Assembly: GCF_048593235.1 (NCBI RefSeq)
Contig: NC_133622.1
Span: 193,533,198 to 193,597,197 of the forward strand
Source: Sminthopsis crassicaudata
Taxonomy: Eukaryota
Direction of reading: 5' to 3'
DNA length: 64,000 bases
Part shown: positions 1 through 62,680 of the stretch, in pieces
Position numbering within the stretch: the stretch's first letter is position 1
How the letters are laid out: the number at the start of each line of letters is the position of its first letter
Notes under the pieces: generated by a model
What the model saw: the letters and a program-made list of their open reading frames with translations, nothing else
Told to the model about the DNA's origin: nothing
The model's database searches: none
Translations under genes and position numbers: made by a program

Positions 1-13
1 GGACAAGGAGCAG
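1..13 (+). CDS. EBF4: 3' end of penultimate coding exon of EBF4 (COE family transcription factor), ...GQGA|
   Basis: GGA CAA GGA GCA G followed by a GT donor at 14-15 (phase 1). It joins in frame to the exon at 90 across a 76-nt intron ending in a pyrimidine tract and TAG. The gene is cut off by the window edge. Confidence 0.6.
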
Positions 14-89
14 GTCTGCGGGAGGGGAGGGGGAGGAGCAGAGCTCCCGGACCCCTTGCTTTCTCGGACTTTTCTCTCCCTCTCCCTAG

Positions 90-121
90 CCATGTCTGGA
101 CTCCTCATCCCCCCCATGTGA
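90..121 (+). CDS. EBF4: Last coding exon of EBF4: (A)MSGLLIPPM*
   Basis: Acceptor tctccctag| at 88-89, then CC ATG TCT GGA CTC CTC ATC CCC CCC ATG TGA. This matches the COE C-terminal signature (EBF1 AISGMIVPPM, EBF3 AMSGLVVPPM, recalled). The EBF4 paralogue is assigned by synteny: it lies tail-to-tail with CPXM1. Confidence 0.75.
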
Positions 122-4640: not shown

Positions 4641-4646
4641 TTTATT
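4641..4646 (-). terminator. Candidate polyadenylation signal (AATAAA) of the NAT8-like gene
   Basis: tttatt on + is AATAAA on -, about 560 nt past the stop codon at 5210. Confidence 0.5.
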
Positions 4647-5209: not shown

Positions 5210-5947
5210 TCAGTCCTCACCCACAGGACTGTTATCTTCAGTTCTGTTGCCAGTCAGGGAATAGTGGTAGCGAGTGACAGGGAGGTCGGCCAGGAATCCA
5301 CTAAGTGTAGGCTGCAGGCATGTAGGGCCTGGATGGAAGCCAAGGCTGGAGAAGAGCCTCTGGGCAGGACTATGGAGCACATGTGTGTCCAGCACCACGA
5401 CCTGGCAGCCAGGGGAGCCGCGGGCAAAGGCCAGCACAGCCTGGCACAGGGCCCTGCCCACCCCATGACCCCGATGCTCGTGGCTTACAGCCAGGGCCCT
5501 CAGTTCCAGCTCCCCATCTCCACTCTTCCCAATCCCTGACACACCCACCATACCCACCACACTGCCATCTGTGTCCTCAGCCACCCAGAACCGAAAGCCT
5601 GGGGCCCCTGGAGCCCTCAGACCAAGACTCATGTCCTGGTGGGCGTAGAGAGCCCAAACATGAGCCAACGCGGGGCGGCCAACAGCCAGGAGCAGCGCCA
5701 GGACCAGCAAGGGCAGCAACAGGGAACGGGATGAGGTTGCCAGGAGAGTGAAGCCACATCCCAGGAGCAGCAGGAACCACGGCCGCCGCAGCATCCGGGC
5801 TCCGAGGGCTGACCCCATCTCGGCCGCCACCACCTCCAGGAGTTCCCAAAGGGCAGCCTCGTCCCCCGCGGCCTTCGGCCGTACCTTAACCCGCAGAGGC
5901 CCATCACCATCAGCACCCTCAGCGAGGTCTGTGGGCCTGGCCTCCAT
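5210..5947 (-). CDS. NAT8/camello-family membrane-anchored GNAT N-acetyltransferase (245 aa, single coding exon)
   Basis: Uninterrupted ORF with Kozak GGCATGG and a splice acceptor (ctctctcacccctgcag|) 14 nt upstream at 5962. It has a hydrophobic segment WFLLLLGCGFTLL...LLLPLLVLALLLAVG, then DM...FWVAE...VVGMVG, acetyl-CoA motif A HRGHGVGRAL and VVLDT...AQRLFSSLGF. These follow human NAT8/NAT8L in the same order (FWVAESEEKVVGMVG, EHRRQGIAKAL, VILDT...LYQSMGF; recalled). Confidence 0.87.
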   Translation of the reverse strand: MEARPTDLAEGADGDGPLRVKVRPKAAGDEAALWELLEVVAAEMGSALGARMLRRPWFLLLLGCGFTLLATSSRSLLLPLLVLALLLAVGRPALAHVWALYAHQDMSLGLRAPGAPGFRFWVAEDTDGSVVGMVGVSGIGKSGDGELELRALAVSHEHRGHGVGRALCQAVLAFARGSPGCQVVVLDTHVLHSPAQRLFSSLGFHPGPTCLQPTLSGFLADLPVTRYHYSLTGNRTEDNSPVGED

Positions 5948-7439
5948 GCCTGCGCCCAGGCCTGCAGGGGTGAGAGAGACCCGAAGAGCTCAAAGTCAGT
6001 ATAACCAGAGGCCCCTGGGGTTCCCCATACCCCAAATCAGCACTGGATTCAAGAACCAGCTTCTTCTCTCAGAGCAGAGGGACTTAGTCAAATTCTCCTC
6101 CCATTTCAATCCAGCAAAAGGAAGCTAAGGGGCTTGTCGCAGGGCAAACATATCTTGGGGCTCAGAAGGTTTTATGTCTCTGATGAGCTTGTGGCAAACT
6201 TTTACCTGTTCCTTTTTTCTTCTTGGTGGGAGTGTGGAGAGGGGGCTGAGTTTGGGCCAAGATGAGGCTGGAGCAATCCTGAAATCAAGCAGTAAAGATG
6301 TGCAGGCCAGCCTCCCTCCATGCAGGGACTAGGAGATAAAATGAGTCAGGAAATCAGGAGGGCTGGATCCGGCCTGGGCAGCATCTGCTACCTCTCTCTT
6401 CAACCCCCTCCAACCCTCAGCTCGGCACCTGCCAAAGATCCTGCCCATTCCATGCCCATCTCCTTACCAGTCATCTCCCACAACCACCATCATCAGCTTC
6501 CCAAGACCTAAGTCTGAGCCTCCCTCCATCTCCCCCCAAAACCTTCAGGGTCTCCCTCCCATCTCTTCAGCTAGCATTTATTCCTCCCTGAGTGGGTGGG
6601 ACTTCTAATTCCAACCTTATTTCAGAATCTCAGAACTCCAACGAGTCCTACCCAGGGCCCCCAAACACGCCACTCCATCTGTTCTTATCAGGGTCCAGAT
6701 AGTCTTTCTAAGCTTAGTTTAGACACCACTCCCTCTGTGGAGCCTTCCTGGATTTTCTCTAAGATCTGCCCCCCACCCCCCCATGGTTAGTGCTTTTTCT
6801 TCTTCCAAATAAGCCTTCCATTTCTTTATTTGTAAACATGAAGACAAGGACAATTTCATTTCTGTTTTAATTCCTAGCACCAGTAATCTCCCAATAAATA
6901 TTCGTTGAATGAACTGGGGATTTACTTCTGAATCAATTCCCTATTTTCTCAAGAATAATAATAGCAAAGCAGAGACTTGGTATTTTACTTAACATTCTGA
7001 TGCAGGGGAAAGATTATGGATTTGAGGTCATAAGATCTCAGTGCAAATCTAACCTCTGTCACTTACTATCTGGGTAATGCTGGATGAATCATAATCTTCC
7101 CAGGTTTCAATTTCCTCAAATGCAAAGGGAGGGGAGGGAGCAGGCCCAGAGGCCCCCAGACACTGCCTCCAACTCCACAGCTATCAGCTTGGACCCCAGC
7201 CTCTATAAGCCCTGGGAAAGGAAGCAGGAGCCCAGACTGTGGGCAGCCTTACCCTGGTGCCTCGAGGCGATCTCTTGGAGGAACTTTCCCTACCAATTTG
7301 TCCCCAACTTATCAGGTTCAATTATCCAAAACCTAAAACAAACAAACCAAACCACATCCTTCATTGGACCCTCAAGGTATCCTCCAGATTTGTTATCAGC
7401 CACAGGCCATTGGAATTTACATAAGGTATATAAGGCAGA

Positions 7440-8690: not shown

Positions 8691-8830
8691 GGGGCAGCCA
8701 GGTGGCGCAGTGGAGAGAGCGCCAGCCCTGAATTCAGGAGGACCCGAGTTCAAATCTGCTCTCAGACACTTAACACTTCCTAGCTGTGTGACCCTGGGCA
8801 AGTCACTTAACTCCAGCCTCAGGGAAAAAA
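8691..8830 (+). mobile_element. tRNA-derived marsupial SINE (WSINE1-type), full length
   Basis: ggggcagccaggtggcgcagtgg (A box), gagttcaaatc (B box), ctcagacacttaacacttcctagctgtgtgaccctgggcaagtcacttaa, then an A tail. Flanked by a ~14-bp direct repeat aag(a)agctaggct. Confidence 0.85.
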
Positions 8831-9379
8831 GAGCTAGGCTATATATATTTCTTCTTTCTATTGACAAAAAACGAGACAACTCAGTATTTTTCACTCATTG
8901 CGTCACCACCCACTCAGTTGCTCCCCCACCTGCGGCTGGCTTCCAACTCAGAGGAGCTTGCCTTAAGATGGCCAGTGACCTCGGCTCTACAAGTTTGACA
9001 TCCGTTTCCTCATCCTCATTCTCTCAAGACATTTCTGCAGCATTTGACTTTGAAAACTGATTACTCACAAGTTTGGGCCCCAAACGGCTGGGAGTAAATG
9101 TAAGGAGCAATCATTTCTGTTTTGGACAGAAGCCTGGAGGGCCTTCTCCATACAGATGTGTGTCTGCGTCTGTATGCACTGTATATATGCAACACACATG
9201 TATCCACCCATACAGCACGCATACATTATATACGTGTACGTATGTGCGTGCCTGTAGGATGTGTGCGTACACATATCACGTAATTTTGAGGTCACTCTCT
9301 GCCTCTCACTTGGCCTTCATTGCTGACCGGGTGTTCCTTCGGTCACGGAGCTCTGTTAAAGGCCCGGATTTCCCACTCG

Positions 9380-10760
9380 TCCTGATCTGTATCTGGCCCC
9401 TGTCCCCAGAGGCTGGAGGGGACACTCAGCAGGCGCCCTCGCACAGCCCCCTCCCTTAAAGCCGGTTCACCGGCCCGGCCCGGCTAGCCTCCGAAGTCCG
9501 GTCACCTTCCAGAACAAAGGACAACGACGTCCACGTCCCCCCCACCTTTCCCCGGTTTCCGGGGAGTGACTCTCCCCGGGCTCCTTGGCAGAATCACCTT
9601 AAACTCGGCGATGCCGGAAAATTCCGGTTTTAGTTTTTTTCTCTCGTGGGATCAAACAGCCACCTCAGGGATCACCTCGTCCAACCCTTTCACGTTACAA
9701 GGGGAGAAACCGAGGCGGCGAGAGGGGGCCGAGCCGAACCCCCCCCTCCCGTCACACAGCGGGGCCTCTCCGGGAAAACCCCCACTCACGGGGGCCGGAA
9801 CCTGGCCCTTCTGACTCTCCCCAGGCCGAGCCTGGCGTGGGGGGTCGCATCGGGGTGCTCCGGGCAAGGTCAGTTTCTCTAAAACCGAACCGTTTTGTTC
9901 TCTCCCGCCCGGTATCCCACGGAGTGACAGGAGGGGTTTGGAGACGGCCAATGTCATTCCTGGGTCACTATCAGCTCGGCAGGAGGCCCCGCGGAGCCCC
10001 GAGCTTCGGGGTTCTCCCTCAGCTGAGCACAGGCCGCCTCTCCTCCCCTAAGCCATTCTTCCCGCCAGTTCCCCGTAGTCCCGGCGCCCTCGGGCCCCCA
10101 TCACCCAACGGCCGCCTCCCCGCATCCCTGCCAGGCCCACTCCCTCCTCCCGGGCCCCAAGGACCGTGTCCCGCTTCCTCCCGGGTTCCCGGATGGGCAG
10201 GAGCACGGAGGGAGGACGGGGAGCCCCCGGGGGAGGCTGCGGCCCAGGCCGGGGCTCGCTCGCCTCAGAGACTCACGTAATGGGGAGAAGAGAAGAGATC
10301 CCTCCACCAGGTCTGCTCCCCCCTCCACTCGTGGTCCCGCTCCTCGGGGGGACTTCAGGCGGGAGCCTGCGCCGACATCCACCCAGCACTCACCTGGCTC
10401 CCGGGCTGCTCCTTCCGGTGGTCGGTCCGGGGCCACGTGACCTGCCGCCGCCGGCGCCGCCGGACAGTGCTGATTGGGTAGCCCCGAGGGAGGCCCGCCC
10501 CCTCCTCCGCCAATAGGGAGAGTAATGGAAAGGGGCGGAGCCATATCTTCCAGCTCTCCTCTGCGTTCCCTCCCTGCATCCCCAGCTTGAGCATCCCCCG
10601 GAGCTCCCAGCTCACACACCCCCGGAGGTGGGCGCTCCCCGCGCGGCCCTGGCTTCGCTCGTCCAGCTGTGTCCGGCCCTCCGTGACTCCCCGGCCCGCA
10701 GCACGCCGGTGCCGGCCAGAGGGCTTTCTTGGTGAAGATGCTGAGCAGATGAATGCAGCC
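9380..10760. promoter_or_regulatory. CpG island / housekeeping-type promoter, probably driving the NAT8-like gene on -
   Basis: Dense in CpG. Contains ETS CTTCCGG (10412), E-box CACGTG (10434-10439), CCAAT boxes (10473-10477 on -, 10510-10514 on +), GC box GGGGCGGAG (10532-10540) and a minus-strand donor CAG|GTGAGT at 10394/10393. Confidence 0.65.
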
Positions 10761-10969
10761 GGGGTTAAGGGGCTCGCCCAGGGTCACATAACTAGTTAGT
10801 ATCTGAGACTGGATTTGGACTCTGGTTTTACTGTACTCTACTGTGACACGAGGAGGAGGAGGAGGAACAGCGGCGGCAGCAGAAGAAGAACAAAAAGAAG
10901 AAGAAAGGGGGAGGAGGAGGAGAATGGGAGGAGGAGGAAGAAGAGAAGGAGGAGAAGGAAGAAGAACAG

Positions 10970-11172
10970 NNNNNNNNNNNNNNNNNNNNNNNNNNNNNNN
11001 NNNNNNNNNNNNNNNNNNNNNNNNNNNNNNNNNNNNNNNNNNNNNNNNNNNNNNNNNNNNNNNNNNNNNNNNNNNNNNNNNNNNNNNNNNNNNNNNNNNN
11101 NNNNNNNNNNNNNNNNNNNNNNNNNNNNNNNNNNNNNNNNNNNNNNNNNNNNNNNNNNNNNNNNNNNNNNNN
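10970..11172. other. Assembly gap (203 N) next to a GAG/GAA purine-rich simple repeat
   Basis: Run of N; 10850-10969 is (GGA/GAA)n. Confidence 0.99.
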
Positions 11173-15100: not shown

Positions 15101-16574
15101 GGAAATTTCCCAGCAAAGTAGAGCTCATTGTCCTATAATTTGCAGACTATTTTTTCCTTTTTAAAAGAATTATGTATTTTCCTTTCATCAGTTGTATAGA
15201 ATGTTTTTCTAACATTTCATTTTTTTTGTGATCAAAAATCACTTTTTATGATCGCACCTCCTAATTCCTTCCTTACTCCAGGCTTCACAGGGAAGCAAAG
15301 GCTCTGTAGTCAGAAGACCTCTCTGACACCATATTTGTGACGTTGGACAAGTCACTTGATTTTCTTGATCTGTAAAATGAAACAGTTGGAACCTCTGAGG
15401 TCCTTTCCAGCTCTAAATCTGTGATTGATAAAGATAGGTCATCTGGACCAGGGACTTGAGTTCATAAAGGATTCTTTTATTATATTCCTACTTATCCTGG
15501 ACATTGATGCCATATCGACTATTTTTATAATCCACAGGTCATTCTTGGCAGAGGAAACAAACAAAATAAGAGTAATTCTGTTCTGTATTCTCACCCTAGT
15601 CTCTTCCTTGATTCCCATCTTTTCCCCAGTATATCCAAAAATCAATCCCCTTTCCCCCCTCACTCTTACTTGTCTTCCTCATCCTTCCCTCATGTTGAAC
15701 TTTAGCATTCCTGAAACCTTCTTACCTTAACATACTATAACTTTCTATTTATCTACTATTACATATTTTTGATTTCACCGTCTGTATGTCTTTTTTTTTT
15801 TAACCTAAATTAGTTGATATATTTTGCAATGGTATCTTCTGACAACTCCCACTTTTCTTCCTTATCAGAGGGCATATTAGAAAAGCATTCTGTGTAGTGG
15901 GGAAAGAGTTGGTTTGGGAGTCAAAAGAGACTGAGTTCAAATCTGATCTTTGGTTGTTTGAGTTCCATTGCTATGGGTTTATTCATATGTTAAAAGGGGG
16001 ATAATAGTCTGACAATATTTATTTGTCAGGGTTCTTGCAAAGATCAAATGAAGTAAAGTGTGCAAATCATTTTGCAAATCTTAAAGTATCATATGTCAGT
16101 TAGAATTATTGGGATTGCTTATCTTTGTGAATTCTAAATTTCATTCCTGAGAATGCTGAGAATTCTTGAGTTGATTTTCCTTGTAAAATTTTTAATCCCT
16201 GGGATCCTCCTAATCCTTCTCTGAATGCTTTTGAAATCTCTTTTCCCAGAATCAGATTCATATCAGACTATGCTTGGATTTCCAGCATCACAAATCACAA
16301 ATTCTAAGATGGAGTAGTCACTTCCCATAATCTTCACCTCTGTAACTAATATGAGTGAGAATCGGATTCAAGATAGAAGTTACCCTTTTTTATGCTACCA
16401 TATTTTAAAAGATGAAGTAATCCACAAGTGAAATTAAGAAATTCTTAGCTTTTCACTTTATGGCAAAGTAAGACACAGAACATAGGCATAGAAAATGAGA
16501 ATACCATCTAAGTAAATCAAGAATTTTTCAGCTGCCTTTCTTTTAAAATGTCTATGGTCTTTCTTGGGCAATTA

Positions 16575-16690
16575 GATGATGTATTGTATAGAGCACTGGC
16601 CCTGAAGTCTGGAGGATCTGAGTTCAAGTCCAGCCTCAGGCACTTAACACTTCCTAGCTCTGTGTCCCTGGGCAGGTTACTTAACCCCCA
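16575..16690 (+). mobile_element. tRNA-derived marsupial SINE (WSINE1-like), diverged
   Basis: tagagcactggccctgaagtctggaggatctgagttcaagtcc...acttaacacttcctagc. Confidence 0.75.
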
Positions 16691-19640: not shown

Positions 19641-29211
<9,571 letters not shown>

Positions 29212-51480: not shown

Positions 51481-51611
51481 TGCATGCTTGTAATTTTTTT
51501 TTACAACAGAGGTTTCTGAAGGGAAGGTGGAATCATTGAGAAGTGATAGGGATGCAAAAAAAAAAAAAAAAAGGAAAAGTACATCAATAAAAGTTTAAAA
51601 TTAAAATTAAA

Positions 51612-51755
51612 GGGGCAGGTAGATGGTGCAGTGGATAGAGCCCCAGCCCTGAATTCTGGAGGACCTGAGTTCAAATCTGGTCTCAGACATTTAACACTTC
51701 CTAGCTGTGTGACTCTGGGCAAGTCACTTAACCCCAATTGCCTCAACCAAAAAAA
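51612..51755 (+). mobile_element. tRNA-derived marsupial SINE (WSINE1-type), full length
   Basis: A and B boxes, canonical body, flanking aaaattaaaattaaa direct repeat. Confidence 0.85.
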
Positions 51756-53525
51756 AATTAAAATTAAAATGAGAAGTGGTATAAAGGATATTATAAGAGA
51801 GATCCATAAATGGAAAGGTAGATGGGCTGGTCCATTCATGAAAATGAATAATCTGTCTACTCCATTGCTAGGCACACAATGTCACAATAGCTAAAGGAAG
51901 AGCACCCTCCTCCAATGTATTGAGTAGACCACCTGGGAAGAACTAATGGGAAAGTACATGCAAGTCATATAGGACAAATAGATAATAGACTGTGATATGG
52001 ACAATTGGAGAAAGGACCACATCAGAGTGTGATCAGAGATTCATCCAGAATGGCTAAGTTTAGAGAACCTGAAGTGGAGGGTGACCAATGTGATTAAGGG
52101 TCTTGAAACCAAACCATATGAGATTTAGTCGAAGGAAATGGGGAAGACAGAAGAAGATAGGACTTAGGAAGAATGGGAATAGCTGACTTTATTTGAAAAG
52201 CAATCATGCTTTGCTTAACCCCCAAATAAGAAACAATGGGTAAAAATCACAGGTTTATTGAGGCTCAATTAAAAAAAAAAGACTTACTAAAATTAGAATT
52301 ATCCAAATGTGGAATTGACTGTCTCAGGAAGTCCTAATTAGAAGTCTTCAAGCAAAGACTGAATGTATGGCCATTTATCAGGGGCCATAATTCTCTTTAC
52401 AACATCATTTATCAGGGATGTTGTAAAGAGAATTATTTATTATTCAGAGACAGTTTGGCCCCCTGAATCCCTTTCTAGCTCTTATATTCTATGATTCTAT
52501 TGCCTTCCCAAACCCATCTTCTGTCTCCTTCTCAGGTTCATGCTTCTATTCTCTTGATTTGCCTCCTTTCTTTTCCCTTTCCTTCTCTTGTTCAATCCCC
52601 TGTACATCTCTACTTTTTCCTCCTGGTACTACTTCCCCAGCTCTTATCTCTCTTGACCACTTTTTTTCTGTTTTATTCTTTGGTTCCTTCTTTGATCTAC
52701 CCCTTTCCTGTGCTCCCCCTTCCCCCAAAAAAATTACCTTCCCTAGTTTTCTTATTCTCTTCTAACTCAACTTTGGTAATGACATGCTGGTATCTCAGAA
52801 TCCACTTGCTTTCCTAGAGCAGTTTAATCAGTTTCTAGGAGCCCAACACACCATGGATGGAATTCATGGAAGAACAGCTAGTGGGGAGTTTCTCCTTGGG
52901 TTTTCCCCACATTCTGACCTTTCAGGGAACAAAGCCCAGTAGGAATCGGACAAATATTCCAGGAATGAAGTACCAGAGCAAACTTATATTGAGAAGCATA
53001 GACAATGGCTGGATATTACACTCAAGTCTACACTTCCTTCCTCCCCTTCTCTAATGACTATTTTCTATCCTCACCTACTTTCCCAGTCTTCTGGGAGCTG
53101 TTTCCAAACTTCTGCAAATCTGCAGATCTGTAGCTGCTACTGTCTCTGCTGATATAGGTGACTCAGGATGCGACCTCTCCCTGCCTCAGTAGATAGTTCC
53201 TGTAGTCTACTCTGTTCCTAAACATTCAAATTCAAACATTAGTCAGAGTGCTCAGAGGAGAGCTTTCTCCAGATCTCTGGTTTACCTGGGATGATGGGAC
53301 ACTGGAGGAAGAATTATGAACTCTCAACTTTACCTCAGTAGCAGTAGGGATCTGGGGTAGTAATTCTAGGTTAGAAGCCTACAAGAGATAAAGCTCAGTC
53401 TTCAGTCTTATTTTCTTAGGCTTCATAAGGCCACAGAGAGAGAAAACCAGGAAATCTTTGCCCTGGGCTTCAAAGTTTTTACTTTCCCTCCAAATTCTCC
53501 TTTCCTAATCAAATTCTCTCTCCTT

Positions 53526-55218: not shown

Positions 55219-57992
55219 AGTCAAGGGACCACCATCTGCCTCCTAACACTACCCCCAATTCAGCCTTGGCCTTGAACCGTCCTCAACCCCATCCAATACA
55301 AGGGACGGGCCTTTGCCCCCTGCCACCGCCCCTTGCCTGACCTGTCTGCTCTGTCTGGGTTGGATTCAGGAGTTCCCGTCGTTCCTTTTCCTCCAGCCTC
55401 CTGTCTGCTCTGGCCCAATCAGTCCCAGGAGTCCCCACCCTGCCCAGCCTCTAATGGCAGGACCTAAGCTGTATTCCTGGTCTTTTCAGTCCCACAAGGC
55501 CTGACTGCCTGGATTCCCACCCATACCTTGACTAGACCCAGGAGCCCAGAGCCCTGAATTTGGAGTCAGGACACCTTAGTTTAAACCCTATTTTTGGTCT
55601 TTACCTGTGTGAATTGGGGCAGGTCCCTCTACCTCCCTGGGCTGTGGTTCTTTATCAGTAAAATAAGGTTGGCCTAGGTGATCTCTAATGTCCCTTCCAA
55701 CTCTCAACTGTATGACACGGAGACCTTTTCCCTTTCTCATGACCTCAGCCTATCTCAATTCTACTCAGAAATTCCTGAGCTTTCCATCGGAGCTAATATA
55801 GCTCTGTTATCCGCTACCAGAAGCCAGCTGGCTCTGAGTGGGAGGGGAGTAAAGTTTTTACTACCAAGGCACCCTCTTCTTCCCAAAGGCCAAAGGCGCA
55901 GACAAGATTCTGAGACCCTAAGAAATCTGGAGAGAACTGTGGTCCGCCATATCCTTGTGGACTGGACTCCCCAGTTAGAGTCAAAGTATGCAGAGCAGTG
56001 GAAGCAACACTTTGAGGGCCCATTCCAGAGTCCAGTCTAGAGCCCAACACTCCAGATTAGTGTGAGAGTCTGGGTGGTCTGCAATCTGCCCTGGTTCCCA
56101 GAACTCTCAAACACTGGAGCATATTGTAGGGTAGAACCTCTGCTTTGGACAGGAGCTAACCGCCTTCTCGGTGATGTTGTAACTCTTAGCTCTGCCCAGG
56201 ACCTGCCTCCATCACTGAGCCATAGATGGACCAGAAAGAGGTCAGTATGAGAAATGGGGCATGATTTCAGGTATGATAGACATTTGGGGATATATTGAAA
56301 GGAGAGGGTGGTTGCTGAGAGTGAGAGTTTGAGAACAATGGAAATGGTTATAAGGAGCCAAGGAACTGGAAAAACCAAATGGAAATTTGTTCTCTAGTTT
56401 CCTTTTACCATTCTCCAAGTTGAGGAATTTTTCGCCCCTGTACGTCTGTATTTCCTCCCCATGGCTCTTCTCCCCTGACTTGTTTTAGGATTCTTGCCAA
56501 TGGTCTTCAATCCCACAGGAACTCCAGCTTTTGTTCCCAGACCTAACTGCACCAACTCCAATGTAAAGTTATTCCTGAGCTCAACTCTCCTGTTGGTTGC
56601 TGGGAAGGTGGAGGGACCAGAGACAAAGATAGAGACAAAATGAAAAGGGATGAATATGAGCTGGATTGATGGCAGTGAGGAGGGTAGAGAGATACCACAT
56701 TTCATCAAGTTCCCCTATAGAATCGATAAGGCAACTCAAGTTTAAGTACCTACCCACTCCCAGTGAAGGAGAAAGAAGGGGGACCCCTAACTATTCCCCC
56801 ATAACTTACATTCTCGTGGGAGAATTTCAAGGTCATGATTACTCCAAGGACCAGCCCTTGCCAGAATATGTGGTTTTGACCTTGGCCATGTAAGAATAAG
56901 AAGTCCCACTTCTATATGTGATAAACTCTTAGAAACCATAATAAAATGTGGGATCAGTGAATATAAAAATAAATAGTTCTGTTGATCAGGAAATAGTTCT
57001 ATAGAGCAGATACTTACTCGTCCTTTCAGACTTGTTTTAATTTGAATTTGAGCCAAGGAAAGTATCCAAGCTCAGTTATTGATCAAGGTTGCTTATTGGA
57101 AAGGGTACTACAAACACCTCCATCTATAATCACCCCCAGTTCCCAGAACTCAAACACTAGAGCATATTGTAGGATATAATCTCTGTTTTGGACAGGAGTT
57201 AACAGCATTCTCAGTGATGTTGTAACTTTTAATTCTGCCCAAGACCTGCCTCCACTATTGAGCCATATATGGATCAGAAATAGGATGTAAGTGCAAAGTA
57301 ATTCCAGAAATGTAAAGTGCAATGTTTAACATATATTACTTGCTGTCTAGGGGAGGGGATGAGGAAAAGGGAGAAAAATGTGGAACACAAGGTTTTGCAA
57401 GGGTGAATGTTGAAACTATCTTTGCATATATTTTGAAAATTTAAAAAAACCTATTTTTAAAAAGATTAAACAATCTACAAAATAATAAATCAAGTCCTCA
57501 TTTAAAAAAAATTTAAAGTGCAGGTAATGTATCTTAAGGCAAAAGAATATTTCTAAGAATTGGCCAAGTCTCTGTCCTTGAGCAGAAATATATCAAGTAA
57601 AGAAACAATTTGTCCAAAGTGACTTCCAAAAGGTATCTGTGGTTTATGTCAGTCACGTCCTCTAGACCAGTGATTTGAAAACTCATTTGATCATAGATCA
57701 GAATGTTCCCAAAAAATGAAGAGGCAAAGGTGTGTATGTAAACTATGCCAGGCTCTTGCTAATTACTATTCTGAATCTCAAAACTCCAGCCTACCACAGT
57801 GAACAAATGATCTAGGAATCACAGGGTAGGGAAACTAGGTTTGTAGAGGGAGGGCATGGGGAATTTTGCTTATATAGGCACATTTCCTATTAAGCTATCA
57901 CTGTCCTGAGAGGAGTCCAACCATGCAACCTAGGAAGCCCTGGAGGAAAGATGTTGAGGTGAGTAAAGGAGGGGTTAAAATTATGTTGGAGA

Positions 57993-58187
57993 GGGGGCAG
58001 CTAGGTGGTGAAGTGGATAGAGCACCAGCCCTGAATTCAGCAGGACCCGAGTTCAAATCTGGTCTCAGACACTTAACACTTCCTAGCTGTGTGACCCTGG
58101 GCTAGTCACTTAGCCCCAGTCTCGGGGATAAAAAAAAAATAATAAAAAAAAATAAAAAAGTCACTTAACCCCAGCCTTAGGGGGGGA
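57993..58187 (+). mobile_element. tRNA-derived marsupial SINE (WSINE1-type) with a duplicated 3' tail
   Basis: Canonical body; 16-bp target-site duplication aaaatta(t/c)gttggaga at 57977-57992 and 58188-58203. Confidence 0.88.
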
Positions 58188-62404: not shown

Positions 62405-62680
62405 GAGAGGCATCTAGGTGGCTCATCAGATAGAGCACCAGTTCTAGAATCAGAAAGTCCTGAGTTCAAATGTGATCTCAGACACTTAATAACTCTGTTA
62501 CCCTGGGAAAACCACATAACTGTTTGCCTCAGTTTCCTCATCTGTAAAATAAACTGAAGAAAGAAATGGAAAACCATTAATAGGAACCCAAATAATGGGA
62601 AAATCATTTCTGTATCTTTGCCAAGAAAACCTCAAATGGGGTCATGAAGAACTGGACACAAATGAATGACAATAAAAACA
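62405..62680 (+). mobile_element. CORE-SINE (MAR1-like)
   Basis: gaggcatctaggtggc...gagttcaaatgtg...tgtttgcctcagtttcctcatctgtaaaat...gccaagaaaacctcaaatggggtcatgaag. Confidence 0.75.

What the first reader, a model, noticed from the sequence alone, without database searches (positions are those of the whole stretch)
5210..5947. Intact NAT8/camello-like acetyltransferase between EBF4 and CPXM1, a position where human has no such gene
Seen: a full 245-aa ORF with a membrane anchor and an intact GNAT motif A (HRGHGVG), plus acceptor, Kozak and AATAAA. Recalled: human NAT8/NAT8B, NAT8L, NAT14 and NAT16 lie on other chromosomes, and EBF4 and CPXM1 are direct neighbours. The sequence is clearly diverged from both NAT8 and NAT8L. 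Inference: either an ancestral family member lost in eutherians or an old retrocopy (the CDS has no intron) that gained a promoter. The substrate is unknown.
Basis: partly seen in the sequence, partly recalled or inferred. Interest (0 to 1): 0.7.

Follow-up and report, generated by a model that had tools for sequence, protein, structure and literature searches.

The report
Marsupial camello acetyltransferase beside CPXM1
This is a real, conserved marsupial gene for a membrane-anchored acetyltransferase that still sits at the family's old tetrapod home next to CPXM1; RefSeq already predicts it, and its sequence has drifted far from its relatives.

Summary
Window 5210-5947 (minus strand) is an intact 245-aa ORF with a GNAT domain (Pfam E 8e-17), an intact acetyl-CoA motif (HRGHGVG) and a two-helix hydrophobic hairpin.

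The genome is Sminthopsis crassicaudata. RefSeq already predicts the gene as 'putative N-acetyltransferase camello'. Intact orthologues (77-87% identity) exist in koala, tammar, bilby, Dromiciops and Monodelphis, with dN/dS of 0.26-0.31.

The gene lies tail-to-tail with an EBF gene, whose stop is at window 119-121, and downstream of CPXM1 on the same strand. In a frog, a lizard and a swan, a conserved 'type A' camello gene occupies this same slot after CPXM1. The site is therefore ancestral, not a retrocopy landing site.

The tree puts the gene inside the type A clade. It is sister to a second, more conservative marsupial copy found elsewhere, and it is apart from eutherian and monotreme NAT8 (type B).

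Its stem branch is about three times longer than its sister's. It has lost family-invariant residues: the D-L-x-D-I-x-x-x-Y motif and the motif-B Tyr, which is now Phe.

No eutherian type A protein appeared, but no eutherian genome was searched.

Verdict: a new member of a known kind, of modest interest.

The parts
5210..5947 (-). Single coding exon (245 aa plus stop) of the marsupial 'M1' camello/NAT8-family acetyltransferase
   Evidence: ORF; Pfam GNAT hit; 100% match to RefSeq P0001 over 99% of its length; dN/dS 0.26-0.31
5663..5782 (-). Codons 56-95: hydrophobic helical hairpin (membrane anchor) inserted in the N-terminal part of the GNAT fold
   Evidence: Hydropathy peaks; AF2 helices 56-73 and 77-110 with pLDDT mostly above 88; nearly invariant among marsupial orthologues; two TM helices are predicted for camello CMLO3 in PMC4133703
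5315..5602 (-). Codons 116-211: GNAT catalytic core (strands and helices beta2 to beta6)
   Evidence: Pfam residues 116-204; AF2 secondary structure; Foldseek matches to GNAT structures, probability 1.00
5447..5476 (-). Codons 158-167: acetyl-CoA pyrophosphate-binding loop (motif A), HRGHGVGRAL
   Evidence: R159 and G162 are invariant in all 44 family members aligned; invariant in marsupial orthologues
5962..5985 (-). Polypyrimidine tract plus CAG splice acceptor 14 nt upstream of the ATG (end of a 5'UTR intron)
   Evidence: Sequence; conserved in Dromiciops and the L001 species; similar acceptors precede the ATG in frog, medaka, lizard B, swan B, platypus B and Dromiciops B genes. Splicing itself was not observed
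5216..5221 (-). GGTGAG donor-like site three codons before the stop, implied by RefSeq isoform X2 (C-terminus ...SPVEDH)
   Evidence: P0001 compared with the window ORF C-terminus; present in Dromiciops, absent in the L001 species. Inferred, not observed
4641..4646 (-). AATAAA poly(A) signal 564 nt after the stop
   Evidence: Pattern scan; comparable signals at about +612 and +654 in Dromiciops
9000..10900 (.). CpG island (GC 0.52-0.72, CpG observed/expected 0.59-0.77), candidate promoter and first exon of the gene
   Evidence: Composition; short blocks are conserved with Dromiciops at 10405-10560 and 9581-9716. The assignment to this gene is inference only
2..121 (+). Neighbour: the reading frame at window 2-121 ends in the last codons and stop of the EBF (COE) gene, convergent with the acetyltransferase gene. 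Only the last codons need be exon; the exon's 5' boundary was not determined
   Evidence: The translation ...LSLAMSGLLIPPM* is identical to the end of the COE1_DBD/TIG/COE1_HLH gene in Dromiciops; Monodelphis has the same arrangement
19701..27252 (-). Neighbour: CPXM1 coding exons (metallocarboxypeptidase M14 part and C-terminus), upstream of and on the same strand as the acetyltransferase gene
   Evidence: M14 motifs; colinear tblastx matches of 60-83% to the CPXM genes of swan, lizard and frog

Best explanation
This is a functional, protein-coding marsupial gene, called M1 here. It descends in place from the vertebrate 'type A' camello/NAT8-family gene that has sat just downstream of CPXM1 since at least the tetrapod ancestor.

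The protein is a GNAT-fold, acetyl-CoA-dependent N-acetyltransferase. A helical hairpin inserted between the first GNAT helix and strand beta2 holds it on an internal membrane (ER, Golgi or nuclear envelope), so both halves of the catalytic domain lie on the same side of the membrane.

In the mammalian stem or early marsupial lineage, the type A gene duplicated. One copy (M2) stayed conservative and now lies elsewhere. The copy that stayed at the CPXM1/EBF4 site evolved fast and then settled under purifying selection. It kept the acetyl-CoA loop. It lost the family's D-L-x-D-I-x-x-x-Y motif before beta2, and the motif-B tyrosine became phenylalanine. I therefore infer a changed acceptor specificity and/or a slower chemical step compared with other camello proteins.

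Shown here: the ORF, the fold, conservation, synteny and tree position. Inferred: membrane location, enzymatic activity, substrate change and expression.
For: The gene is real and constrained. It has a Pfam GNAT hit and intact orthologues in six other marsupial sequences spanning Ameridelphia and Australidelphia. dN/dS is 0.26-0.31 in three pairs. The CDS is 90% identical to the L001 species against 76-82% in the flanks.

Fold: the AF2 model has pLDDT 86 and pTM 0.81, showing a GNAT core plus helices 56-73 and 77-110. Foldseek returns GNAT structures at probability 1.00.

Synteny: in Anolis, CPXM (F5_F8_type_C + Peptidase_M14 + CarboxypepD_reg) is followed 7.4 kb downstream, on the same strand, by a type A GNAT and then a second GNAT. 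Spea has the same layout with a 4.3 kb gap. In the swan a 738-aa gene is followed by a GNAT, a second GNAT and VPS16. These CPXM genes are colinear with the window's exons at 19.7-27.3 kb. The whole 16 kb locus is colinear between dunnart and Dromiciops, and it ends in the EBF gene. Monodelphis has the gene about 4.9 kb from a COE gene.

Tree: M1 and M2 are sisters (99/97). Both sit inside the amniote type A clade (99/99) and the type A clade as a whole (99/97). Eutherian, monotreme and Dromiciops NAT8-like proteins and the second sauropsid gene fall outside it (quick trees). The M1 stem is 1.02 changes per site against 0.37 for M2.

Residue losses: of 60 columns conserved at 80% or more in the rest of the family, 20 are changed in M1. 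These include two 100%-conserved residues (D to G109; a Y removed by a 5-residue deletion) and Y to F199.

Family functions come from the literature. Camello proteins have two predicted TM helices, acetylate histone H4 and fall into two gnathostome groups (PMC4133703). NAT8 and NAT8B are ER-membrane lysine acetyltransferases, and NAT8 is proposed as the mercapturic-acid enzyme (PMC8041774).
Against: No RNA evidence was obtained. The runs that hold the exon are not on record as RNA. The one short Logan contig carries the unspliced upstream sequence.

The M1-M2 sister relation is favoured but not secure. An AU test does not reject M1 branching outside M2 plus sauropsids (p 0.059). Both marsupial clades are rich in Gly/Ala/Arg/Pro, as are archosaur proteins, with which they wrongly nest. 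Composition therefore biases the tree.

The genomic site of M2 is unknown: no neighbours lie within 10 kb.

Loss of invariant residues, including the probable general-acid Tyr, could mean little or no catalytic activity.

Absence from eutherians rests on protein lists that are not exhaustive.
Confidence: 0.72

Rival explanations
1. M1 is an older paralogue. The duplication that produced it predates amniotes, or at least the mammal-sauropsid split, and its line was lost everywhere except marsupials. M2 would then be the true orthologue of the sauropsid type A gene.
For: An AU test does not reject a tree with M2 plus sauropsid type A as a clade excluding M1 (p 0.059). M2 is much closer in sequence to sauropsid type A (50-52% to Pelusios) than M1 is (35%). 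Shared Gly/Ala/Arg/Pro richness could be pulling M1 and M2 together falsely.
Against: The best tree joins M1 and M2 at 99/97. The exhaustive profile search found nothing closer to M1 than marsupial M2 (E 8e-46) and then a turtle type A protein (E 1e-35), so there is no M1-like protein in any non-marsupial. M1, not M2, holds the slot after CPXM1 that type A holds in frog and lizard.
Confidence: 0.12
2. M1 is a retrocopy, or another dispersed duplicate, that landed between EBF4 and CPXM1 and acquired a promoter.
For: The CDS has no intron. The stem branch is long, as is often seen in relocated copies.
Against: All family members examined have an intron-free CDS, so this feature does not discriminate. 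M1 keeps an acceptor-like site just before the ATG, as do frog, medaka, swan, platypus and Dromiciops relatives. Its place and strand after CPXM1 match the type A gene of frog, lizard and swan. A chance landing in that exact slot is very unlikely.
Confidence: 0.04
3. M1 is a conserved pseudoenzyme. It still binds acetyl-CoA or partner proteins on the membrane, but it no longer acetylates and acts as a regulator or scaffold.
For: M1 has lost the 100%-conserved Asp and Tyr of the pre-beta2 motif. The motif-B Tyr is Phe in all six orthologues. In several GNATs that tyrosine protonates the leaving CoA thiolate; this comes from my own knowledge of AANAT and SSAT and was not tested here. Purifying selection continues.
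Against: Motif A and most core residues are intact: 40 of 60 family-conserved columns are kept. Many active GNATs lack that tyrosine; for example, the aligned residue in 4h89 is Trp. Phe for Tyr usually slows the reaction rather than abolishing it.
Confidence: 0.12

Closest known systems
Type A camello proteins of non-mammalian vertebrates (e.g. Anolis P0175 'N-acetyltransferase 8 isoform X2', Pelusios P0011, Spea P0193, Xenopus nat8.1 P0252)
   Same: Same gene slot directly downstream of CPXM1 on the same strand. Same length class and architecture: N-terminal GNAT strand and helix, a helical hairpin, then the GNAT core. Single coding exon. Same clade in the tree.
   Different: Only 32-45% identical. 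M1 lacks the D-L-x-D-I-x-x-x-Y motif through a 5-residue deletion. It has F for the invariant motif-B Y, H for Q192 and G for P138. It also has longer N- and C-terminal tails.
Marsupial M2 copy (P0008 Petaurus, P0010 tammar, P0204 bilby, P0212 wombat; named 'NAT8-like', 'CML1' or '8F1-like')
   Same: Nearest relative: 42-45% identity and sister in the tree at 99/97. Both are rich in Gly/Ala/Arg/Pro.
   Different: M2 keeps the family-invariant motifs and has a three-fold shorter stem.
Eutherian NAT8/NAT8B (ATase2/ATase1; mouse Cml/Nat8 family) and monotreme NAT8-like: 'type B'
   Same: Same family, fold and membrane anchor. Literature functions are ER-lumen lysine acetylation and proposed cysteine-S-conjugate acetylation (PMC8041774).
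   Different: A different ancient paralogue group: type B clusters with the second gene of the sauropsid and frog arrays. Identity to M1 is 27-34%. In Myotis the gene is linked with TPRKB, not CPXM1.
Mouse CMLO3 and a related camello protein (E0CYR6), tested as histone H4 acetyltransferases; zebrafish CMLO3 knockdown (PMC4133703)
   Same: Small GNAT with two predicted TM helices. The paper reports two gnathostome groups, as found here.
   Different: No histone, localisation or developmental data exist for M1. Which group CMLO3 belongs to relative to M1 was not tested here.
NAT8L and NAT14
   Different: No named NAT8L or NAT14 sequence was identified among the hits that were looked up. M1's best matches are type A camello proteins by a wide margin (E 1e-46 and 1e-35 against 1e-22 or weaker for the rest of the family). 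Orthology to NAT8L or NAT14 was not tested directly.

Membership tests
GNAT superfamily (Pfam clan Acetyltrans) | Significant match to a GNAT domain profile | tested here: met
   Acetyltransf_1 E 7.9e-17 (62 bits against a cut-off of 20.7); Acetyltransf_7 E 3.1e-15
GNAT superfamily (Pfam clan Acetyltrans) | Motif A acetyl-CoA loop R/Q-x-x-G-x-G/A | tested here: met
   R159-G-H-G162-V-G164. R159 and G162 are invariant in 44 family members
GNAT superfamily (Pfam clan Acetyltrans) | GNAT alpha/beta fold | tested here: met
   AF2 pLDDT 86.3, pTM 0.81; at least 500 PDB GNAT matches with E 0.001 or below, the best being 5c82 at E 1.7e-9
GNAT superfamily (Pfam clan Acetyltrans) | Motif-B tyrosine, the general acid in many but not all GNATs | tested here: not met
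   F199 in all six M1 orthologues, where the other 38 family members aligned all have Y. It aligns with Y of 5c82. The catalytic role of this residue is from general knowledge, not tested here
GNAT superfamily (Pfam clan Acetyltrans) | Acetyl transfer from acetyl-CoA to an acceptor | not testable with these tools
   Needs a biochemical assay
NAT8/camello family | Full-length alignment including the hydrophobic hairpin between the first helix and beta2 | tested here: met
   Alignments A3 and A4 cover about residues 17-230. The S75-L-L-L-P hairpin turn and flanks are conserved
NAT8/camello family | Family-invariant D-L-x-D-I-x-x-x-Y motif before beta2 | tested here: not met
   D to G109, D to A112, I to P113, and the Y removed by a 5-residue deletion, in all six M1 orthologues
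NAT8/camello family | Gene structure: whole CDS in one exon, preceded by a 5'UTR intron | tested here: inconclusive
   The single-exon CDS is shown. An acceptor motif before the ATG is conserved and shared with relatives.
Type A camello lineage (orthologues of the CPXM1-adjacent gene of frog and lizard) | Placement inside the type A clade | tested here: met
   Type A clade 99/97 and amniote type A clade 99/99 include M1. Caveats: composition bias and borderline AU tests
Type A camello lineage (orthologues of the CPXM1-adjacent gene of frog and lizard) | Position directly downstream of CPXM1, same strand | tested here: met
   In the window, CPXM1 exons lie at 27.3-19.7 kb (minus) and the gene at 5947-5210 (minus). 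Anolis, Spea and swan show the same order
Eutherian NAT8/NAT8B orthologue (type B) | Clusters with eutherian NAT8 in a tree | tested here: not met
   Myotis, hippo and shrew NAT8/NAT8B, the monotreme proteins and Dromiciops P0032 all fall outside the type A clade that holds M1
Processed retrocopy | Lies at a site unrelated to the parental locus and lacks parental introns | tested here: not met
   It lies at the ancestral family locus. An acceptor-like site before the ATG is retained. Poly(A) tract and target-site duplications were not searched for

The most novel reading that the evidence does not exclude
Marsupials kept, and eutherians lost, the in-place descendant of the ancestral CPXM1-linked camello gene. 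After duplication it was remodelled into an acetyltransferase with a new acceptor pocket, or into an acetyl-CoA-binding pseudoenzyme. That would make it a therian-lineage-specific membrane acetylation function with no eutherian counterpart.
Probability: 0.25. Interest if true: 0.5.

Novelty: new member of a known kind. Interest (0 to 1): 0.3.

Why it matters
The NAT8/camello family is small and poorly understood. Its proposed roles include ER-lumen lysine acetylation, mercapturic-acid formation, histone H4 acetylation and control of gastrulation.

This work shows that the family's home in tetrapods is the CPXM1 neighbourhood. It also shows that there are two old lineages, A and B, and that marsupials still carry two type A genes, while the eutherian proteins seen here are all type B. 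This gives an evolutionary frame for comparing functions.

The copy at the ancestral site is a natural experiment. It retains the acetyl-CoA loop and the membrane hairpin but has lost residues that are invariant in every other family member. Assaying it could therefore show what those residues do.

It is not a new kind of system. The gene model is already in RefSeq.

Tried and rejected
1. Read evidence. The look-up of sequencing runs listed 18 holders, none on record as RNA. After that, no letters of 8771-8815 were sent to any search tool, and local BLAST databases used the window with those 45 bases masked.

2. The Logan contig L001 (P0004) was checked as a possible transcript. It is colinear with the genomic sequence upstream of the acceptor and begins with adapter-like sequence, so it says nothing about splicing.

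3. Word-index searches with the whole protein and with the GNAT core alone found only marsupial orthologues. The exhaustive profile search was therefore used.

4. The window protein itself was not on record in the look-up of encoding contigs.

5. A second GNAT gene or remnant was sought in the window by tblastn with type A, type B and M2 queries. None was found at E 1e-3.

6. Neighbours of M2 (Petaurus, wombat) and of type B genes (platypus, Dromiciops) gave no informative synteny within 10 kb.

7. The nesting of the marsupial clade within archosaurs (100/100) was rejected as biology. It tracks Gly/Ala/Arg/Pro content, and sauropsid monophyly is not rejected (AU p 0.061).

8. A words search of earlier scan findings for NAT8, camello or GNAT found nothing.

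No contig taken for human was handled.
Full report
OBSERVATION. It scores Pfam Acetyltransf_1 at E 7.9e-17 over residues 116-204, with weaker hits to five other GNAT models. NCBIfam and PDB sequence searches return only generic GNATs. The motif A loop HRGHGVG (158-164) is present. A polypyrimidine tract and CAG acceptor lie 14 nt upstream of the ATG. The start context is gcaggcATGG. An AATAAA on the minus strand lies at 4646-4641, 564 nt after the stop. Long chance ORFs occur in other frames of this GC-rich stretch, but the evidence below shows that this one is a gene.

WHOSE GENE IT IS. The protein is 100% identical over 99% of its length to a RefSeq prediction from Sminthopsis crassicaudata, 'putative N-acetyltransferase camello isoform X2'. 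RefSeq's product ends ...SPVEDH where the read-through ORF ends ...SPVGED*. The model therefore uses the GGTGAG at about 5220 as a donor. That donor is GATGAG in another marsupial, so the read-through C-terminus is probably the conserved form.

ORTHOLOGUES AND CONSTRAINT.
- Orthologues 77-87% identical are predicted in koala, Dromiciops, tammar, bilby and Monodelphis, and one more comes from a Logan assembly.
- The hairpin, the core and motif A are nearly invariant among them.
- Nei-Gojobori dN/dS is 0.26-0.31 for the three pairs for which I had DNA: dunnart, Dromiciops L008 and the L001 species.
- The CDS is 90% identical to L001, against 76-82% in the flanks.
- The acceptor is conserved in all three, and Dromiciops has poly(A) signals at a similar distance.

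NEIGHBOURHOOD.
- The frame at window 2-121 (plus strand) ends ...LSLAMSGLLIPPM*. This is identical to the C-terminus of the Dromiciops gene that carries COE1_DBD, TIG and COE1_HLH and lies convergent, 5.6 kb past the Dromiciops orthologue. Monodelphis shows the same arrangement at 4.9 kb.
- Metallocarboxypeptidase M14 motifs lie on the minus strand at about 21.7-22.9 kb. tblastx shows a colinear series of exons from 27252 down to about 19700, matching the CPXM genes of swan, Anolis and Spea at 60-83%.
- The order in the window is therefore: EBF gene (plus strand), then the acetyltransferase (minus), then CPXM1 (minus).
- The 16 kb around the gene is colinear between dunnart and Dromiciops.
- tblastn finds no second GNAT in the 64 kb.
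- I call the neighbours EBF4 and CPXM1 because the swan locus continues into VPS16. From my own knowledge of human 20p13, VPS16 belongs to the EBF4-CPXM1 paralogon rather than the EBF3-CPXM2 one. This naming is inference.

WIDER FAMILY. Word-index searches found only the marsupial orthologues and one 46%-identical Petaurus protein. I therefore ran the exhaustive profile search. It gave three representatives at E 1e-30 or below: the query's own cluster, a tammar 'NAT8-like' protein (P0010, E 8e-46) and a turtle protein (P0011, E 1e-35). A word search seeded with a diverse family alignment (A3) recovered a large, highly conserved group of about 221-aa 'camello' proteins. These come from teleosts, coelacanth, amphibians, squamates, tuatara, turtles, crocodilians and birds, plus four marsupial proteins (Petaurus, tammar, bilby, wombat). 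No eutherian or monotreme was among the best 120. I call this group type A, its marsupial members M2, and the window's clade M1.

SYNTENY OUTSIDE MAMMALS.
- Anolis: a 774-aa F5_F8_type_C / Peptidase_M14 / CarboxypepD_reg gene is followed 7.4 kb downstream, on the same strand, by the type A gene. A second GNAT follows 8 kb further on.
- Spea bombifrons: the same order with a 4.3 kb gap, followed by two or more further GNATs.
- Black swan: a 738-aa gene (CPXM1), then type A, a second GNAT and VPS16.
- Medaka: two tandem GNATs but no other gene within 10 kb.
The slot that M1 occupies, immediately after CPXM1 on its strand, is therefore the slot of the type A gene in frog, lizard and bird. This makes the site ancestral for tetrapods.

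TREE. A careful IQ-TREE run was made on 48 proteins and 238 columns with LG+C20+F+G4 PMSF (quick versions).
- The type A clade has 99/97 support and the amniote type A clade 99/99.
- M1 and M2 are sisters at 99/97.
- Eutherian NAT8/NAT8B (Myotis, hippo, shrew), echidna and platypus proteins, Dromiciops P0032 and the second genes of Anolis, swan and Spea all lie outside type A (names). I call these type B.
- This agrees with the two gnathostome camello groups reported in PMC4133703.
- The M1 stem is 1.02 changes per site against 0.37 for M2. Branches within M1 are short (0.04-0.17).

CAVEATS ON THE TREE.
- The marsupial pair nests within archosaurs at 100/100, which contradicts the species tree.
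- M1, M2 and the archosaur proteins all have 33-40% Gly+Ala+Arg+Pro, against 17-26% in the rest. I read this nesting as a composition artefact.
- AU tests do not reject sauropsid monophyly (p 0.061). They also do not reject a tree in which M1 branches outside M2 plus sauropsids (p 0.059).
- The duplication is therefore most simply placed on the mammalian or marsupial stem, but an older origin is not excluded.

STRUCTURE AND RESIDUES. AlphaFold2 with the 44-sequence alignment gives pLDDT 86.3 and pTM 0.81. The elements are strand 21-24, helix 30-54, helices 56-73 and 77-110, and then the usual GNAT strands and helices. Foldseek returns only GNAT enzymes. The two hydrophobic helices sit inside the GNAT fold, between its first helix and beta2. 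They must therefore form a hairpin that leaves both flanks on one side of the membrane. This is inference, but it is consistent with the two TM helices predicted for CMLO3.

Sixty alignment columns are conserved at 80% or more in the 38 non-M1 sequences. M1 keeps 40 of them and has changed 20 in at least two, and mostly all six, of its orthologues. Kept residues include R159, G162, W121, the F-W-V-A-E strand and the G-F of motif B. Changed residues include:
- the D-L-x-D-I-x-x-x-Y motif that precedes beta2 (D to G109, D to A112, I to P113, and the 100%-conserved Y removed by a 5-residue deletion);
- Q to H192;
- the 100%-conserved motif-B Y to F199.
In several well-studied GNATs the tyrosine at that position protonates the leaving CoA thiolate. 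That point is my own knowledge and was not tested here.

HOW IT MOST LIKELY WORKS. I infer a membrane-hairpin-anchored GNAT that binds acetyl-CoA through an intact motif A and acetylates an amine. Its acceptor pocket has been remodelled relative to every other camello protein. The substrate is unknown. Family precedents are lysines of secretory-pathway proteins and cysteine S-conjugates for NAT8/NAT8B (PMC8041774) and histone H4 for CMLO3 (PMC4133703). A pseudoenzyme reading remains possible.

RETROCOPY OPTION. The intron-free CDS is shared by every family member inspected. Acceptor-like sites just upstream of the ATG are seen in frog A, medaka A, lizard B, swan B, platypus B and Dromiciops B genes as well as in M1. 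With the conserved position after CPXM1, this argues for retention in place.

WHAT IS NOT SHOWN.
- Expression and splicing. I worked beside those places afterwards and masked them in local searches.
- Absence from eutherians and monotremes. No such genome could be searched and human sequence was not consulted. The protein lists are suggestive only.
- The location of M2.
- Any biochemical activity.

VERDICT. The 'ancestral member retained in marsupials' reading is supported and the retrocopy reading is not. The gene is already predicted by RefSeq. It is a new, fast-diverged member of a known family at that family's ancestral locus, and it is of modest interest.

Noticed in passing
window 8691-8770, 16566-16690, 51596-51769, 57991-58153, 62405-62529; several copies in L008: An interspersed repeat of about 80-175 bp (SINE-like) occurs at least five times in the window. 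It matches several copies in the Dromiciops locus at 75-90%.
   Followed up: no
window 9000-10900 and N run 10970-11172: A CpG island (GC up to 0.72, CpG observed/expected up to 0.77) lies 3-5 kb upstream of the acetyltransferase exon, next to a masked or gap stretch. It may be the gene's promoter and first exon, but nothing here ties it to the gene.
   Followed up: partly
window about 360-420: A (TG)n microsatellite lies about 240 nt after the EBF gene's stop codon, presumably in its 3'UTR. It was seen as CVCVCV runs in the translations.
   Followed up: no
window 5237-5245 (codons 235-237, R-T-E); sequon N234-R-T at 5240-5248: An N-x-T sequon (N234-R/N/S-T) in the C-terminal tail is kept in six of seven M1 sequences; bilby has N-N-I. 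If it is glycosylated, the catalytic domain would face the lumen.
   Followed up: no
P0002 (koala), P0005 (tammar): RefSeq models in koala and tammar add 19-21 N-terminal residues (MRE..GLDGG) ahead of the conserved MEA(R/K) start. This implies an upstream exon with an in-frame ATG spliced to the same acceptor. The dunnart model starts at MEAR.
   Followed up: no
L002 (swan), L003 (Anolis), L005 (Spea): In non-mammalian tetrapods the camello/NAT8 genes form a tandem array right after CPXM1, with type A first and one or more type B genes after it. In the swan the array runs into VPS16. Eutherian NAT8 (type B) is linked with TPRKB in Myotis instead, so type B has moved in mammals.
   Followed up: partly
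tree: Marsupial type A proteins nest inside archosaurs with full support. All three groups share 33-40% Gly+Ala+Arg+Pro, a clear case of composition-driven attraction under LG+C20.
   Followed up: yes
I did not re-examine it.
   Followed up: no
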